The notes below the pieces were generated by a model, which did no database searches, was not told where the DNA came from, and worked only from the letters and a program-made list of their open reading frames with translations. The position numbers were made by a program, and so were the translations under genes. This document shows positions 29,820 through 38,200 of a stretch of DNA of 64,000 nt, piece by piece; positions within the stretch are counted from its first letter, which is position 1; each line of letters begins with the position of its first letter. Source of the stretch: Mytilus californianus (lineage: Eukaryota); the NCBI RefSeq assembly GCF_021869535.1, contig NW_026262690.1:83080001-83144000 (forward strand). The letters run 5' to 3'.

Positions 29820-31006
29820 CCTAGTTTCATTATCTTTTAAAGTACTTACACTTGTAAATATTATAATCCTATTAAAGAAAAGAAAGTATAAGTTACAATC
29901 CTATCAAGGAATAAAAAATATAAGTACTTAATATAAAAATATCTACATAGATTTAAGCATTATTATATATATTATACGAGCAAGTCAATAGGGACCAACC
30001 GCATTTGGTAAACTTGGTTTTGAAACTTTTAATCGGATAAGTTACGAACTATTATTTTCACTTTTATTCGTTTAGAAATTAAGACATGTCAATGGGTACA
30101 TCAAATATGAAAACAGGAGATGAAAAGCGCGCGAAAAAGAGATAAACATCATCCACGTTCAGAAATCATCCCCTTTTTTAGAGTCTGAAAAGGCACATCT
30201 TAGCATTCCAAAACAATAATTGTACGATGATTGACATTTCTCCGATTGATTTGTGCATTCTGATAATAAGCTAGTTACATTGCATAATAACAGAGAAGTA
30301 TTAAGTATTGATTAGGCGGTATTGCAAGAATACTTAATCCATGTCTGTAAATTTGTTCATTTTCCTATATAATATGAATAAAAATAAATGTTGGATATAC
30401 TTAAAGGAGAGAACAACCTAGCAGATATAAAATAATATGTTGATTTCAACCTCAGATTTTAAATGATGGACACATCCATATCCTATCTCATGTTCTAAAT
30501 TATTTCAGTATAGACAAGTTGCGAATGAATTGAACAGGGAATACTTAAGATCTTTAATAGCGACCCCAATCTTTATATAAAATGAAACAAAAAGAAGCAC
30601 GTTGAGCTTGAAAACACAGTAAAACTCGAAAGCTTTATACACAATGTAAAATGAAGACAACATCGATGTTTGGCGCATATTTGGATGACCATGTTTTGAA
30701 CATGTTTTTTTATATATTCGGTGACACATCCGTTTAAAAGATTTACGGTGCCATTCTTTCTTTTTACATCTGGGAAACAGTAGTGCATGAAAATGGAATG
30801 TAGAGCAAACATACACGCTATTAATTAAACAAATATTTAAACGATCTATAGCCCTCGGATCAAGTTTTATTTTCTTGTTTTATCTATATATATATATTGC
30901 ACTGTTAGTTTATATGCCGTTCATAACACTTATTTTCCCGTAATTGACATATTCCTGAAAAATTCCCTTCAAGGAGGTTTTATTGGTTACATAAATCACA
31001 TATTAC

Positions 31007-31546
31007 CTCTCTTCCCTAGTTGGTTTTGTGGATTAAAAAAGTTAAATGTTTTGGAGTTGAATTGATCTGGATCAAATCCACCACCGCTTCCTCCACTTTG
31101 TCCCAATTTTGATGAGGATGGATCTAACATGTTGGCTTGTAATTGGTTAACCTTATTTGCGTCGAACTTTGGAGGCTGACTTCCACTACTGCTGCCACCA
31201 CCACCGCTTCCACCGCCACTAGTCTGTGCTTGTGGATTAAAGAAATTGAACTTCATAGTGTTGAACTGGTCCGGGTTAAACATAGCTCCGCCGCCTCCAC
31301 CTGAACCAAGCTGTGACTTGGAAGGATCTAGCATACTGGATTGTACTTGATTAACCTTATTAGGATCAAAGTTTGGTGGCTGACTTCCACTGCTACTAGA
31401 ACTTCCACCGCTGCTGCCACCGGAACTTCCACCGCTGCTGCCACCAGAACTTCCACCGCTGCTGCCACCAGAACTTCCACCGCTGCTGCCACCAGAACTT
31501 CCACCGCTGCTGCCACCGGAACTTCCCTGACTTGTTTGTCTTCTAC
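31007..31546 (-). CDS. Gene B exon 5 (24-bp GSSGGSSG repeat x5, two modules, ends NQLGKR)
   Basis: 540 nt, symmetric phase 1; acceptor ttctattcag. Confidence 0.9.
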
Positions 31547-34500
31547 CTGAATAGAATATTTAACACGATTAAATCAGTTGTGATTGGCGTAACTGCGATC
31601 ACTCTCAGATCTGTACTTTGTATCTTTAGTGGTTTTCGTAGTTGTTTTTGTACTTAAAGGATGTTCGCTTCCTTGTTTTTGAATTTTTGCCAGATTTTCG
31701 GAATCCTCTGGTTTTATCTACGTTTTTCCATTAACCCCTACTTTTCTTTTCATAATTTTATTACATATAGTTTTAAAAGCCATATTTGAAAATCTTACAA
31801 AATCCTTGTTATTTTTTCATATTTTTTAAAAGAGAAAAGCGGACAATGTTAACAGTATGAAAAATCTAGAGAGAATCATTTCCCGCCAAATTTTCAGCGG
31901 CTTATATCTCGAAAACAAGCACACGGACCCTTAATTTTTTTCTGCTTTTTTAGTTCCTCTATTTATATACTATCAATTTATAACAGTCTTTTAAAAAGCT
32001 TGTTATTTTGAAGTAGAGTAGCGAACATCCTTACATCGTTCTGATGAGTTAAGTTAAGCCCCTTTCCACTGATTTTTATAGTATGTTCTTATGTTGTACT
32101 GTTTCGCCTATGTCCCAGTTTAGGGGAGGGTTGCGCTTCCGCTAACATGTTTAACCCCGTCACATTCTTTATGTGCCTGTGCCAAGAATGAAGAGTTGTC
32201 TCATTGGCAATCATACCAGTAACCACATCTTCTTACTTTGATATTGTAAGAAGATATTTGGAGATAAAAAGAATAAGCCTGAACTGACCACTTTGTTAAT
32301 TGACGAATAAATTCCAAGAGACTAGTTGCGCGTGTTAAAAAAGTCCCCTTTTTTGTCAATTCTGTATTTTTTCAAGTTAATTTTTTATAACGGACTATGA
32401 ATTTTAGTTATTTCACGTAGTGCGTATATTATTGAATTAAGGCTGCATTGCTACCGTACACGTAAAACAACAATTACATCAGTTGTAACTACAATTTACC
32501 CCTCTTTCCTAGTTGGTTTTGTGGATTAAAGAAGTTGAATGTCTTGGAATTGAATTGATCTGGATCAAATCCACCGGCGCTTCCCCCACTTTGTCCCAAT
32601 TTTGATGAAGATGGGTCCAACATGTTGGTTTGTAATTGGTTAACTTTATTTGCGTCGAACTTTGGTGGCTGACTTCCTCCGCTACTGCTGCCACTGCCGC
32701 CACCACCACCACCGCTAGTCTGTGCTTGTGGATTAAAGAAATTAAACTTCATGGTGTTGAACTGGTCCGGGTTAAACATAGCTCCGCCGCCTCCACCGGA
32801 ACCAAGCTGTGACTTGGAAGGATCTAACATACTGGATTGTACCTGGTTTACTTTATTAGGGTCAAAGTTTGGTGGCTGACTACCACTGCTACTAGAACTT
32901 CCACCACTACTTCCGCCGGAACTACCTTGACTTGCCTGTCGTCTACCTGTTCAATAAAAATAAATAGCACAGTGTATCACAAATAGCAGTTGTATTGAAA
33001 ATGAAAGCAGATGTAAAATCGGGTTGTTATAATGGTTTAGAATTTTCAAAAACATAAAAAATGAAATACATACGTCTTCCTGCTGTCATTGCACTAGGAT
33101 TGAAGAAGCTAAAGGACATGCTGTTGAACTGGTCAGGGTTAAAACCACTGCCTCCTCCTCCGCCTGATCCTAGCTGTAGTTTTGATGGGTCTAGAAAACT
33201 GGCTTGTATTTGGTTGACTTTGTTGGGATCAAAATTTGGCATTTGTGCACTACCACTGCTGCTGCCACCACCAGAACTGCTACTACTTCCGCCGGAACTA
33301 CCACCAGAACCACTACCACTGCTGCTAGACCCGCCTCCACTAGGACTGAAACACAGCAGTACAATAAATCATCGTTTTAATTTAGTTCTTTAATGTTTAT
33401 AAATGTTTAGATCATACATTTTGATAGGAGAAAATATGACAACATAACAAGTAATCATTTTCTATTGCTCAAGGACATTCTTCATTCGTGTGCTTTTTAT
33501 ATATATTTATGTAATAGATTTTCTTACAGATGATTTCGGTATCTCTTAATACCTTTGCTGGCTCCCGCCTCCTAGAAACTGTGATGGATTTAACAAAAAC
33601 TGAGGAGGTTGCATATTCTGTGATAGTGATCCACTGGAGCTACCACCGGAGCCTCCTTGTGTACCACCAGAACTTCCACCGCTCTGAGTAACTCCACCGG
33701 AACTTCCACTGCTTGGTGTCACTCCACCAGAACTTCCACCAGTCTGAGTCACTCCACCAGAACTTCCACCTGACGATCCCCCGGATGTGCTGTTCGCTTG
33801 TCGAACTAGAAATAAATGAATATATAGCTAGGTATGAAATAATAAAATTTCTGCAATTTTTTTTCAAGGTTTATGCATTGTGAAATAGTAGAAGTATATC
33901 TACATAAAATGAAGAGATTAAACTAAAAAAAAAGCATTGTGAAAGTTTCAGTCTCTTGTGGAGAGTTGTCTCATTGGCAATCTTACCACATCTTCTTATT
34001 TTTATATTTACATAAAATGAAGGGATTTTAATAAAAGCTTTGATTGGAATTTGAAAGATTACCATCAGACATGCTATTCTTACTTTACTTCAATTTTCTA
34101 TTTTCTAGATATTGTTTTGTCCTCCGCCACTTGAAAAATCACTAGAACAAAACAGATAAACTCCTATAAACTAGTGAATAATCGCGCAATTTCAAATGTA
34201 TAGGCAAGCTACCTTCGTTAATAAGAATCACAGATTCTTGAAACAGTACAGGGGAAAATGACAAACAAACAATGCAGTGAAGAAGATACCAATTTTCAAA
34301 GGTCGAAATGACATTTGCTTTCTTGATCTTATTTCGTTTGCTTCATGTAAGTTTGTCTATTTTTTGTAGTATCGATGATTCTTTTGGTTTAAATTTATTG
34401 AATCGCTTGAATGTAACTTCGGCCATTGTAAATCGTATAGTTTGAATAGGAAAACACTTAACTCTGAATTGTGTTAAACTTGCAAAACAATGGTTTTCTA

Positions 34501-35210
34501 TGTTGACAAGGCTCAAGGCATAATATTACAGAGAGAATAGGAACGTAGATTTGAATCGTTTGTTGTCTTAATTTACAAATTCGCCGTTTCAGAATCTAAA
34601 GGATTGCAGGTAATTTCAGTGTTCGTAAATCAAAATATAAAGAAGTTAAGACATTGGTTGAATATCCATGTTTAGGACTTTTAATCAATCAGAACATTTT
34701 GATGAACAATTTGTGCATTTTTGAAAAAAAAAACAAAATATTATTTAACCTTAACTTAGTAAAAACGAATTTGTGGAATTGTAATTAGATATTTAATTAT
34801 TTATAACGAATATAAAATCGATATTAAAATTTAAGATAACAAATTCTGTAATTAGAAACAAATGTTACTACGACTTCACGTATTACAAATGAAACTTCAC
34901 TTAAAGATGAATTAAAGAAGTTATGTGATTTTTTTTAATTTCAGGTAGTTGTAAAATCATGTTTAATTGAAGTATTTTCAAAGGTAGGGGAATGGGTCAC
35001 AGAAATCTGATAGAAACAATGACCATGCTTTTTTCTTTTCTTTTTTTTTTGTACAGCCTTTTTGGGATTCCCCTCTCTCTCTTTCTGTTAAAAAGCTATA
35101 TTAGTTTACGTTCAAATATGAATGTTCCTACCGAAAAATATAAACTTACCACTAATGGCGAATGCATGGCTGACCAATAAAGTCGCCAATATAATCGTTG
35201 TCCACGCCAT
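31007..35210 (-). CDS. Gene B: secreted Gly/Ser-rich polyprotein with FDPNKVN/LDPS/FNPDQFN modules and basic cleavage sites (at least 524 aa; 3' exon unresolved)
   Basis: Exons 35210-35150 (MAWTTIILATLLVSHAFAIS, G|GTAAGT), 33805-33553, 33345-33074, 32946-32500 and 31546-31007. Intron phases 1,2,1,1 all join in frame, and the last exon found ends in a phase-1 donor G|GTAATA. Confidence 0.88.
32500..32946 (-). CDS. Gene B exon 4 (two 3-motif modules, ends NQLGKR)
   Basis: 447 nt, symmetric phase 1; paralogous to exon 5. Confidence 0.9.
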
Positions 35211-38200
35211 ATTCGATGTGAATTATGAATGAAATTTTAGGATTATTTTAATAATTGAAGGTCGCAGGTGAGACATCGTATCAAAAGTTCATGTCTTCGA
35301 TAACATACTTTCGACAGGTGGAATTGATATGGGATCCTTCAACCCTTACTTATCTTTCACAAAGAAATTTATGTGAAAAAAATGAAGCATTTTTCATGTC
35401 ACAAAATCATGAAATCGGCTATCAAATTTAATTTCCTGCGTTCACTGTTCACTAAAACTACTTAGTTTTGACAAGAGTTGTGTTATCTGGGAACATAATG
35501 TCAATATATTCTCTAAAAGGAAATTGTGTATTTTAGTTTTTTTTAATGAACCAAGAATTTTTACGGCAAATAAAAATAAAATTATATAAAAATAGGTAGA
35601 GATGCAATTTTTTCGCTCGCAATCTGAAATCGTTTCCACAAGCTATACAGACATCAACGGCAAAACCACGAGCACGGTCTCCAGCGCCTTAGACCAATCG
35701 GCAAAAAGGGCTAGTAAAATATATATAACAAAAGATAAGGCTTATTGCTTGCATCGGAAAGTAGCATGTGGAGATCTCATATAAGTGGCATAAGAACTGT
35801 TAATACCAAATTTTATTTATATGGTTGGATTGGAAACCAAGTTTTATTTTCTTCAAAAGAATTTCAGCCAAGGTCAATTACAAATGCAAAGAAATTAATA
35901 ACATCATTATTCCATTTGAATCTTCAGTAACAACTATACCATTATCATTTTTAATATGTATTGCATAACGCTTACACCAAATTTCATTGTGTTTGTTTTA
36001 AATGCTTAAACATTGCCGTCATGCAAAACGCCAAATCCTAGTTTAAATACAATCTAATGATAATTATTAATTTTGTGGAATGATTGACTACTTATCCAAT
36101 AGATGTATTTTATATCTTTGTGTTATTTCCTTGAAGTTAGGGAACTAATGGAACTACGATATCAACTGCTGACTTGAAATTTCTAGCTATACAAATTTTA
36201 ATTTTCTAGAATGCTGTTCGGGAATATGCCTTATTCTATGCAACTTACTAGTATATGAAAGAATTGTATGATAAAGATGTTAGGTAATTTTTTAGTCTGG
36301 TTAAGGAAATGCTTGTGTTTTGAAATTCCATCTTTTATCGTTTGACAACTACATTCTAGTATATAAGATAAAGAGCAAAATCAATGATTTGAATGATATC
36401 GTCGTAAAATCTATGCAAAAACAAAACAAAGTTAAGAGAGAACAAATGAAGGTACAACAATGAAAGAGTAAAGCACTTGCAAAGCCACTGCTACTTGCCA
36501 CGATCAATGGCGGATCCAGGATAGGACGTAGAAGGCGTACCCACCACTCTGATCGCCAAAAAAATCAAATCTAATGTTTCTCACGATTTATATGATTTTT
36601 TATCATAAAATCGTCCAAAATTGTTACGCCTTGCTCCGCTCGCCATTCGCTCTTCCATATTCGGGAATTACGCCCCCTTTCAAAAATTCTGGATCCTACC
36701 CTGCCAATGTTGATGTAGGTGATGCTTCTTAAATTGAGCAACAATCTTAGTGGCTCAAATCTTTATTAATGCAAAAGCTAGTGACTGGTGCTGCTCCTAT
36801 GTTCTAGTGTCTCAACAAGATAACGCTGTTTGTAACTGATCTCAGACAAGTTAATTCGGTTTCAATATAAGATTTTATCTTTTCCTAGGATTGACCATTC
36901 CATTGATAAGATTCAGTATGTAAAATCTCATCAAATTTCGTTTATTAACAAGTCACTTGCAGGTGACCTTGACAAAGGATATTTTTTGTAACGACAGTAT
37001 ATTTTAACTCATGCCCTTTGTAATGAAAAAATGATTTTTTTTTTAAAAGATGTAACAATACTATTTAAGACTTTTGTTGAAACGCCTCTTGCAAAATTCA
37101 CTATTATCTTTCCCAAAGTGATTATATTGTCAGGCCAATGTTGAAACTAAGGTTTCAACTCCCTCAGACAAAGTTGACCTAAGATGGATTTGACAATTAT
37201 GTTTATGCCCCTTTTGGTAAAATAGCTATTTACGTCTTTCATTGCTAAAACATCATTCATTGGCTATCAACGTTTCGGCTTTGAGTGTTACTGATGAAGG
37301 TTAAAGCTGAAAAGTACTTCGGACTCACAAAATTTATCAAGTGTTATTTTAATTTTTGAGGCTAAAACAAGGTTTTGCGTCTGTCCCAAATAAAGGCAAC
37401 AGTAGTATACCGGTGTTCAAAAGTCATAAATCCCGAAGTCAGGAGTCTCTGGCCTTTGTTAGTCTTGTATGTTTTTAATTTTAGTTCATTTATATGTTTC
37501 GGAGTTTAGTGTGATGTTCATTTTCACTGAACTAGTACACATTTTTTTAGGGGGCCAGCTGAAGCCCGCCTCCGGGTGCGGGATTTTCTCGCTGTGTTGA
37601 AGACCCACTGGTGGCCTTGGGCTGTTTTCTGCTCTTTGGTCGGGTTGTTGTCTCTTTGACACATTACCCATTTCCATTCTCAATTTTATTATTGTGGTAT
37701 CATTATAGATAAAATAGATGCACTTGTGGGATTTTATCATTATCTTGAAAAACAAGATTATGAAACCTCTAGGCATTGCTTAAAATCTGCAGGAAATTAA
37801 CCAATTACATTAAATCACTTTGAGGACAATCGTAGGAAATACTCACTTCAGACTCAGAGAAGCAAATCAATTAAATTTGATAAATGCATATCAAGGGCAA
37901 AACTAATGTAATTTCTAATCTAAATCCTTTTGTAATATTCGAAGTGCAAATATACTTGTACATTCTATATGCATAGTCGGTGAAATTAAAATCTAGATAG
38001 ACATACACTTGTCGTTCATCTGACAAAATATACTAGTATACACATTTATTGAAATAAATAGGCCTTTTTATTATCACAAGTTTTGTCAGTCAGTTAACAT
38101 CTGTCTGATTTATATACTTTTCGTGTTCTATATGTTACAGACGTAGCTAGAATAGCTAAGTTCTTGTTGACAATATAAGCTAATGACGAACATCTCGTTA

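What the first reader, a model, noticed from the sequence alone, without database searches (positions are those of the whole stretch)
31007..35210. Gene B is a prohormone-like polyprotein whose cleavage and amidation sites are built by splicing
Seen: the junctions read ...SAMTAG-R/R-RR-QASQG (R codon split across 33074/32946), ...QNQLG-KR-G/RR-QTSQG (32500/31546) and ...QNQLG-KR (31007), and the N-terminus reads AFA-ISVR-QANS. Every module starts with Gln straight after Arg and ends in Gly followed by a basic pair. Established: furin/prohormone convertases cut after R-X-(K/R)-R or KR/RR; C-terminal Gly is the PAM amidation signal; N-terminal Gln is cyclised to pyroglutamate. Inference: three large products (about residues 23-193, 199-341 and 348-521) capped at both ends like neuropeptides but with structural-protein composition, which is an unusual combination.
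Basis: partly seen in the sequence, partly recalled or inferred. Interest (0 to 1): 0.85.

Follow-up and report, generated by a model that had tools for sequence, protein, structure and literature searches.

The report
Bivalve secreted polyprotein with prohormone-type cut sites
This is a real, spliced bivalve gene for a floppy, secreted Gly/Ser-rich repeat protein. Its three modules are separated by cutting-and-capping signals of the kind used for neuropeptides, and these signals are conserved across distant bivalves, so the precursor is probably cut into three capped 14-17 kDa pieces of unknown job.

Summary
Gene B is a five-exon minus-strand gene (35210 to 30996) encoding a 527-aa secreted protein. 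All nine Arg sit at five places: VR-Q, G-RRRR-Q, G-KR-G-RR-Q and G-KR near the C-terminus. Intron-less contigs from a related species and from an RNA library bridge all four predicted junctions.

One correction: 31007 is not a donor. Exon 5 reads on to GNM-stop, followed by a conserved AATAAA.

Relatives include other mussels, a scallop, unionid freshwater mussels, two further assemblies and a plankton transcript. In them, all but one module boundary reads Gly-basic-basic, then a variable 0-6 residue spacer holding a phase-1 intron, then basic-Arg-Gln. C-termini read G-stop, GK-stop, GR-stop or GKR plus a junk tail. All give a Gly-extended end.

The two duplicated module exons differ almost only synonymously (pN 0.02, pS 0.39).

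The module is predicted disordered and has no Pfam, Atlas or literature match. It is absent from the neuropeptide, shell and ligament lists I could check.

Cleavage is likely. Amidation and pyroGlu are plausible but unproven, and the function is unknown. This scan had already noted the wider F-D/N-P-N cluster next door.

The parts
35150..35210 (-). Exon 1. ATG at 35210. Encodes an 18-aa signal peptide ending AFA (small residues at -3 and -1), then I-S and the first base of the Val codon.
   Evidence: The joint 35150 to 33805 is bridged by an intron-less X1 contig.
33553..33805 (-). Exon 2. Starts (V)R-QANSTSGG and continues as a Gly/Ser/Thr-rich region. The VR-Q start is shared with Gene A in this window.
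   Evidence: The joint 33553/33345 is bridged in X1.
33074..33345 (-). Exon 3. Gly/Ser stretch plus one conserved unit of about 55 aa (P.FDPN.VNQ.Q..LDPS...LG..GG..F[ND]PDQFN..F.FFNP). Ends AMTAG-R plus the C of the split Arg codon.
   Evidence: The joint at 33074/32946 is bridged by a 387-nt X1 contig.
32936..32946 (-). Start of exon 4: GT AGA CGA CAG. It completes R-R-R-Q of cleavage site 1 (G194-RRRR-Q199).
   Evidence: The same split is present in L002.
32500..32946 (-). Exon 4, a phase-1/phase-1 cassette encoding product 2: RRQ, two conserved units, then QNQLG-KR-G.
32500..32509 (-). GGA AAG AGG G: the Gly-Lys-Arg signal at the end of product 2, plus the first base of the spacer Gly.
   Evidence: The exon 4/5 joint is seen in X1 and in RNA run X17.
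30996..31546 (-). Exon 5 (terminal), a diverged duplicate of exon 4 with a 32-aa SSGG expansion. It starts (G)RR-QTSQG and ends QNQLG-KR-GNM-stop (TGA at 30998-30996).
31008..31016 (-). GGG AAG AGA: the C-terminal Gly-Lys-Arg signal of product 3.
   Evidence: Relatives end G-stop, GK-stop, GR-stop or GKR plus a tail.
30979..30984 (-). AATAAA polyadenylation signal, 11 nt after the stop codon. It is conserved at the same place in related mussel contigs.

Best explanation
Gene B encodes a secreted, intrinsically disordered polyprotein rich in Gly, Ser, Gln, Asn and Phe. It belongs to an unnamed family whose named members are all bivalves.

Proposed mechanism:
1. The signal peptide is removed.
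2. Furin or prohormone-convertase-type enzymes cut after the basic runs at the module boundaries (G-RRRR|Q, G-KR|G-RR|Q, G-KR|GNM). This releases three products of about 171, 143 and 174 residues and discards a one-residue spacer and a three-residue tail.
3. A carboxypeptidase E/D-type enzyme then trims the basic residues.
4. The exposed Gly is converted to a C-terminal amide by peptidylglycine alpha-amidating monooxygenase.
5. The new N-terminal Gln cyclises to pyroglutamate.

The products would then be protected from exopeptidases at both ends.

Each product is encoded by its own exon or exons. The later modules are phase-1/phase-1 cassette exons that carry their own RR-Q start and G-KR end, so exon duplication or loss changes the number of products without breaking frame or signals.

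Status of each claim:
- Shown: the gene, its splicing, its transcription in a relative, the site pattern and its conservation.
- Inferred: cleavage (about 0.8), amidation and pyroGlu (about 0.55 each).
- Unknown: function. My best guess is an extracellular gel, matrix or mucus component rather than a classical hormone.
For: - **Gene and splicing:**
- **Arg placement:** all Arg lie at the boundaries, and the pattern was not reached in 20000 shuffles.
- **Furin consensus:** R-X-[KR]-R is met at RRRR and at R-G-R-R (sequence).
- **Conservation:** Gly-basic-basic / variable spacer / basic-Arg-Gln is conserved in Mytilida-like relatives, Mizuhopecten, Potamilus, Sinanodonta, two further assemblies and a metatranscript. 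The phase-1 intron sits in the spacer.
- **Selection:** codons at the sites differ synonymously between species and between copies. Exon 4 versus exon 5 gives pN about 0.02 and pS about 0.39.
- **C-termini:** G-TGA, G-TAA, GK-TAA, GR-TAA, or GKR plus unrelated tails (GNM, GIMSFI, GKFFNIYYKKTYIS).
- **Machinery and precedents in bivalves:**
  - Amidated and pGlu peptides were seen by MS in oysters (PMC4200219).
  - Pif is cut at RMKR (PMC11291548).
  - pGlu is found on LICP, Prismalin-14 and PPL3 (PMC13080008).
- **Disorder:** AF2 mean pLDDT 53.7, pTM 0.16.
Against: - No protein-level data exist, so cleavage, amidation and pyroGlu are all inferred from sequence.
- Gly is 22% of the protein, and G-rich linkers follow every internal unit. 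Part of the 'Gly before the basic pair' signal could therefore be inherited linker.
- Products of 143-174 residues are far larger than usual PAM substrates.
- The N-terminal site is a single Arg (ISVR-Q) without an upstream basic residue.
- One homologue has RR-D instead of RR-Q (P0027 N-terminus).
- One L013 boundary lacks its own G-basic end.
- The RNA run from the genome's own study showed no reads on the exons in the 6% of reads sampled. Tissue and cell type, and hence whether PAM and PC are co-expressed, are unknown.
Confidence: 0.65

Rival explanations
1. Cleavage only. The basic runs are ordinary furin sites of the constitutive secretory pathway that separate modules of a matrix polyprotein, as in Pif or profilaggrin. 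The flanking Gly and Gln are linker residues or subsite preferences, and there is no amidation or pyroGlu.
For: Furin consensus is met at two sites. Pif sets a bivalve precedent. G-rich linkers follow every unit, so Gly next to the site may be inherited. The products are much larger than known amidated peptides.
Against: - It does not explain why C-termini in different lineages are G-stop, GK-stop, GR-stop or GKR-tail, all of which yield terminal Gly.
- It does not explain why Ser, as common as Gly in the linkers, never precedes the basic pair.
- It does not explain why two sites flank a discarded variable spacer.
- It does not explain why Gln follows the last Arg in 13 of 14 boundaries.
Confidence: 0.2
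2. No processing. The protein is secreted intact, and the Arg/Lys clusters act as charged patches between low-complexity blocks, for example for binding polyanions or tuning phase separation.
For: No direct evidence of cleavage. Low-complexity proteins often carry sparse charged 'stickers'.
Against: - All Arg lie only at module boundaries.
- Spacer and tail sequences are unconserved while the flanking G and Q are fixed.
- In some lineages the C-terminal basic residues are absent altogether (G-stop). That fits a removable signal, not a functional charge patch.
Confidence: 0.08
3. True hormone or neuropeptide precursor. The active species are small, for example a C-terminal ...FNFFNPQNQL-amide released by a further monobasic cut, and the Gly/Ser-rich parts are spacers.
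For: Signal peptide, dibasic sites, Gly-amidation signal and Gln start are the textbook precursor grammar.
Against: - There are no internal dibasic sites.
- The candidate monobasic Lys before TFNFFNP is not conserved (Potamilus has S-V-P).
- Conservation covers the whole 55-aa unit, not only the C-terminus.
- The family is absent from the scallop and oyster neuropeptide supplements searched and from all full text searched.
Confidence: 0.07

Closest known systems
Multi-copy neuropeptide/prohormone precursors (e.g. molluscan FMRFamide, APGWamide, ELH precursors)
   Same: Signal peptide. Repeated products flanked by KR/RR. Gly before the basic pair as an amidation donor. Discarded spacers between two basic sites. 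Gln at new N-termini.
   Different: Products are 143-174 residues of disordered Gly/Ser/Asn/Gln/Phe-rich sequence, not 4-40 residue peptides. One cassette exon encodes one product. The family is not in the bivalve neuropeptide catalogues checked.
Pif (Pinctada fucata nacre protein precursor cut at RMKR into Pif97 and Pif80)
   Same: A bivalve secreted precursor split at a basic convertase-type site into separately acting extracellular products (PMC11291548).
   Different: Pif has VWA and chitin-binding domains and a single cut. It has no repeated modules and no Gly/Gln capping grammar. There is no sequence similarity.
Profilaggrin and nematode polyprotein allergens (tandem units released by cutting linkers)
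   Same: Tandem near-identical units made as one precursor and released by linker cleavage. Unit number varies between relatives. This comparison rests on my own knowledge and was not tested here.
   Different: Those units are folded (NPA) or intracellular (filaggrin), and they are not amidated or pGlu-capped. There is no homology.
The neighbouring bivalve F-[D/N]-P-[N/S] repeat protein cluster noted earlier in this scan (s1-302495, s1-302637)
   Same: Same genomic neighbourhood. All are secreted and low-complexity, with F-D/N-P-N type motifs and a reported C-terminal Gly-Lys signal. The 888-aa ORF at 43042-40379 and Gene A carry FDPN/FNPN motifs, and Gene A shares the VR-Q start.
   Different: Gene B is the member with internal module boundaries, that is, a polyprotein. 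The 888-aa ORF (...GEKVK-stop) and Gene A's putative last ORF (17969-17577...DLLNF-stop) do not end in G-K/R.

Membership tests
Neuropeptide/prohormone precursor | N-terminal signal peptide | tested here: met
   Hydrophobic 18-aa N-terminus with A-F-A at -3 to -1, by inspection. No dedicated predictor was run.
Neuropeptide/prohormone precursor | Products flanked by conserved di- or multibasic convertase sites | tested here: met
   RRRR, KR-G-RR and KR in this gene. Equivalent sites are present in every lineage examined, though one L013 boundary lacks its own G-basic end.
Neuropeptide/prohormone precursor | Gly immediately before the basic site or stop (amidation donor) | tested here: met
   Gly at every G-basic boundary seen, and C-termini G*, GK*, GR* or GKR-tail*. 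This is sequence level only; the amide itself was not observed.
Neuropeptide/prohormone precursor | Small bioactive products (a few to about 70 residues) | tested here: not met
   Predicted products are 171, 143 and 174 residues with no internal dibasic sites.
Neuropeptide/prohormone precursor | Expression in neurons or endocrine cells; presence in peptidomes or catalogues | tested here: inconclusive
   Motifs are absent from the scallop and oyster neuropeptide supplements and from full text. The tissue of the expressing runs is coded and unknown.
Bivalve shell/ligament matrix protein | Detected in a shell or ligament proteome | tested here: inconclusive
   Motifs were not found in the M. galloprovincialis shell proteome supplement or in the P. 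fucata insoluble shell/ligament supplement. Other proteomes could not be searched.
Bivalve unit-repeat family (about 55-aa unit P.FDPN.VNQ...LDPS...LG...F[ND]PDQFN..F.FFNP) | Significant sequence similarity over the unit to the other members | tested here: met
   E-values are 1e-55 to 1e-14 against mussel, Potamilus, Sinanodonta and Mizuhopecten proteins. There are only 23 representatives among 1.84 billion, and all named ones are bivalves.
Any Pfam family | Match above the gathering score | tested here: not met
   Only sub-threshold chance hits. No ESM Atlas neighbour.

The most novel reading that the evidence does not exclude
This bivalve-wide family would be a new class of convertase/PAM/glutaminyl-cyclase substrates. 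They are large (14-17 kDa) intrinsically disordered extracellular polypeptides, pyroGlu-capped at the N-terminus and amidated at the C-terminus. They are made from polyproteins whose product number is tuned by duplication or loss of self-contained cassette exons. In effect, the neuropeptide-processing pathway would have been co-opted to manufacture exopeptidase-proof material or large signalling molecules.
Probability: 0.4. Interest if true: 0.75.

Novelty: new variant of a known kind. Interest (0 to 1): 0.62.

Why it matters
If the caps are real, these would be among the largest amidated, pyroGlu-blocked polypeptides known. They would show the prohormone-processing pathway applied to disordered, material-like proteins in an animal class.

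The family is conserved across deeply divergent bivalve orders: about 70% identity between this gene and the unionid Potamilus over the unit. Even so, it is unnamed, largely unannotated and absent from the literature searched. It therefore probably marks an unstudied bivalve-specific secretion.

The cassette-exon design gives a simple genetic way to change product dosage. Relatives with one and with two module exons illustrate it.

The prediction is directly testable by mass spectrometry.

Tried and rejected
- **Further module exons or a donor at 31007:** rejected. There is no tblastn match downstream. The stop comes three codons on, AATAAA is conserved, and relatives' 3' flanks align to ours.
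- **Family and fold assignment:**
  - Pfam gave only chance hits.
  - The ESM Atlas search gave nothing.
  - AF2 with a 24-row alignment was low confidence, so I ran no fold search.
- **Full-length annotated orthologues:** not reached, because the word-index search is length-limited to the exon-sized query.
- **Accession and motif searches in papers:** none found.
- **Ligament methionine-rich proteins and abductin-like rubber:** considered because neighbouring Gene A is Met/Gly-rich. The motifs are not in that paper's supplements.
- **Shell matrix protein:** motifs are not in the Mytilus shell proteome supplement, and another paper holds no supplements.
- **Crystalline-style or mucus role:** the literature search gave no usable lead.
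- **Classical neuropeptide:** not in the scallop or oyster catalogues.
- **Failed look-ups:** exact look-up of P0015 and P0021 contigs failed.
- **Own-species RNA:** the RNA run from the genome's own study gave reads only on intronic repeats.
Full report
**1. What is there**

The window is AT-rich animal DNA (about 32% GC). Protein relatives and earlier notes of this scan place it in a bivalve.

On the minus strand between 35210 and 30996 lies a five-exon gene. All introns are GT..AG.

| Exon | Coordinates (minus strand) |
|---|---|
| 1 | 35210-35150 |
| 2 | 33805-33553 |
| 3 | 33345-33074 |
| 4 | 32946-32500 |
| 5 | 31546-30996 |

The spliced frame gives a 527-aa protein:
- It starts with an 18-aa hydrophobic signal peptide ending A-F-A.
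- Composition is 23.5% Ser, 22.4% Gly, 8.9% Gln, 7.2% Asn and 6.5% Phe. There is no Cys, Tyr or Glu.

**2. Is the splicing real?**

Laying public runs on 30900-35300 showed intron-less contigs in run X1 of a related 'organism A'. They cross 35150/33805, 33553/33345, 33074/32946 and 32500/31546.
- X1's RNA label is only a guess. Contigs that lack the introns must nevertheless derive from spliced transcripts.
- Run X17, an RNA-Seq library labelled mollusc metagenome, shows the exon 4/5 joint too.
- The relative differs by synonymous changes and has 32 fewer residues of SSGG repeat in exon 5.
- The RNA run from the same study as the best genomic holders (X21, 6% of reads sampled) gave no reads on the exons. 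It only hit two intronic repeats, so that sample does not express the gene detectably.

**3. Correction at the 3' end**

I reject that for four reasons:
- The frame continues G-N-M-stop (TGA at 30998-30996), and AATAAA sits at 30984-30979.
- No further module exon exists downstream.
- In related mussel contigs (L005-L011) the same AATAAA follows the same exon.
- The DNA beyond it aligns to the DNA beyond our exon 5.

Exon 5 is therefore terminal and the protein ends ...QNQLG-KR-GNM.

**4. More than chance?**

All nine Arg of the protein lie at five places: R22, RRRR195-198, KR343-344, RR346-347 and KR523-524. Lys elsewhere is always single.

In 20000 shuffles of the mature sequence:
- Four G[KR][KR] were reached three times.
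- Four G[KR][KR] together with three R-Q were never reached.

**5. Relatives**

A search of 1.84 billion representatives found only 23 proteins, and the word-index searches found 20 and 33.

The named hits are all bivalves:
- Potamilus streckersoni and Sinanodonta woodiana (Unionida).
- Mizuhopecten yessoensis (scallop).

The rest are unnamed single-exon ORFs called on mussel-like contaminant contigs, whole-genome assemblies and one marine metatranscript.

The shared element is a unit of about 55 aa: P.FDPN.VNQ.Q..LDPS...LG..GG..F[ND]PDQ[FYW]N..F.[FLM]FNP. The window's exon 5 translation is 71% identical to the Potamilus protein P0008 over the aligned stretch.

Other checks:
- There is no Pfam family and no ESM Atlas neighbour.
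- AlphaFold2 with the 24-row alignment gives mean pLDDT 53.7 and pTM 0.16, with only short helices over NKVNQ.Q..ML. The module is essentially disordered.
- Contig L002 keeps synteny with the 888-aa FDPN/FNPN-repeat ORF at 43042-40379.

**6.

Yes. I read the loci directly.

| Lineage | Internal boundaries | C-terminus |
|---|---|---|
| This gene | TAG-RRRR-Q; QLG-KR-G-RR-Q | QLG-KR-GNM-stop |
| Related mussel L002 | SGG-R\|RRR-QTSQG, with the identical split codon | QLG-KR-G + KFFNIYYKKTYIS |
| Related mussels L005-L011 | RR-QTS | QLG-KR-GIMSFI-stop |
| Potamilus | MTG-RR-AI\|A-RR-QQSG; FTG-RR-S\|APVRM-RR-QTSS | QNQLG-TAA |
| Potamilus / Sinanodonta paralogues | GSKR-QANFG | NQMGK-TAA in Potamilus, with AATAAA overlapping the stop; NQIGK at the annotated end in Sinanodonta |
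| Scallop | VKR-QTSGG; QLG-RRR-LT-R-QTT | QLG-KRR; the true end is unclear |
| Plankton transcript | NQLG-KR-GLF-RR-QSQQ | not covered |
| L013 | MTG-KRR-AL\|L-RR-Q; QVG-RR-QASPG | QAQMAG-TGA |
| L014 | MTG-KRR-AL\|V-RR-Q; PVG-KR-QASPG | QAQMG-R-TAA |

The grammar is Gly, two or three basic residues, a spacer of 0-6 unconserved residues that holds a phase-1 intron, one or two basic residues ending in Arg, then Gln.

Three points support functional conservation:
- Codons at these positions differ synonymously between species (GGA/GGG, AGA/AGG/CGT, CAA/CAG), so the amino acids are what is conserved.
- The C-termini converge by four routes (G-stop, GK-stop, GR-stop, GKR plus junk tail) on one outcome: a Gly-extended end after basic trimming.
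- That convergence is the strongest argument that Gly acts as an amidation donor rather than being only a linker residue.

Exceptions:
- One homologue's N-terminal site reads RR-D (P0027).
- One L013 boundary lacks its own G-basic end.

**7. Exon cassette and duplication**

Exons 4 and 5 are phase-1/phase-1 and homologous only within the exon edges. Over 147 aligned codons they differ at 36 synonymous-only and 5 non-synonymous codons. That gives pS about 0.39 and pN about 0.02.

This points to an old duplication with both copies under strong purifying selection, RR-Q and G-KR included. Related mussels L005-L011 and L002/L003 carry a single module exon, whereas organism A has both.

So 'sites built by splicing' is best restated as follows. 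Each later product is one self-contained cassette exon, and the intron sits in the discarded spacer. Only the RRRR run truly needs both exons.

**8. Mechanism proposed**

The steps are:
1. Signal peptidase removes the signal peptide.
2. A convertase cuts at RRRR|Q, KR|G, RR|Q and KR|G. Furin consensus R-X-[KR]-R is met at RRRR and at R-G-R-R.
3. A carboxypeptidase trims the basic residues.
4. PAM converts the terminal Gly to an amide.
5. The N-terminal Gln cyclises to pyroglutamate.

Predicted products are residues 23-193, 199-341 and 348-521, at 15.7, 14.4 and 16.6 kDa before any glycosylation. Their pI values are 4.4, 6.2 and 6.2.

The machinery and precedents exist in bivalves:
- Amidated and pGlu peptides, and Gly-extended intermediates, were seen by MS in oysters (PMC4200219).
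- Pif is split at RMKR (PMC11291548).
- pGlu is present on LICP, Prismalin-14 and PPL3 (PMC13080008).

My estimates are about 0.8 for cleavage and about 0.55 each for amidation and pyroGlu. The N-terminal ISVR-Q site is the weakest, being a single Arg.

**9. Function**

Function is not established. The motifs are absent from all of these:
- All full text searched.
- The scallop and oyster neuropeptide supplements.
- A Mytilus shell proteome supplement.
- The pearl-oyster insoluble shell and ligament supplement.

The composition, the disorder, the 55-aa conserved unit and the restriction of all named relatives to bivalves lead me to favour an extracellular gel, matrix or mucus component whose ends are blocked against exopeptidases. 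Large signalling polypeptides are the minority alternative. The hit in a plankton metatranscriptome hints at larval expression but proves nothing.

**10. Verdict**

- This is a new variant of a known kind: prohormone-type processing grammar applied to large disordered modules of an undescribed bivalve family.
- The wider cluster was already noted by this scan on adjacent DNA (s1-302495, s1-302637, s1-318235).

Noticed in passing
window 31635-32222 and 33840-34133 (introns 4 and 1 of Gene B): Two intronic copies of an interspersed repeat containing ...AAGAAGATGTGGT..ATTGCCAATGAGACAACTCT... They draw very high depth in every run laid, including the RNA raw reads, with many loose ends. This looks like an abundant, transcribed mobile element of this genome.
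   Followed up: no
window 43042-40379 (minus strand): An 888-aa open frame full of FDPN.VN / FNPN / FNPS motifs, ending ...GEKVK-stop. It lies next to Gene B. A homologous 904-aa frame lies upstream of the Gene B orthologue on metagenome contig L002, so the gene order is conserved.
   Followed up: partly
window 21454-19856 and 17969-17577 (Gene A, minus strand): Gene A's large exon begins ...T|VRQSFNPN, the same VR-Q start as Gene B exon 2. It is Met/Gly/Ser/Gln-rich with MFNPNA(M/Q)M repeats. It is the GC-richest stretch of the window (0.43).
   Followed up: no
window 31431-31526 (exon 5): The SSGG repeat tract is length-variable. The transcript of related organism A skips 96 nt (32 aa) here relative to the window.
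   Followed up: partly
L005-L011, L002-L004 versus window 32946-31007: Related mussels carry one module exon where this genome and organism A carry two. pS of about 0.39 between the two copies suggests an old duplication, with later loss by unequal recombination in some lineages, or independent histories.
   Followed up: partly
L012:5950-7569 (Potamilus) and P0020 (Sinanodonta): A two-exon unionid paralogue has the signal peptide, then FPSVR, an extra propeptide ending GSKR-QANFG, and a C-terminus of NQMGK/NQIGK. In Potamilus the stop follows directly and AATAAA overlaps it. The SVR and QAN motifs match Gene B's ISVR-QANS.
   Followed up: partly
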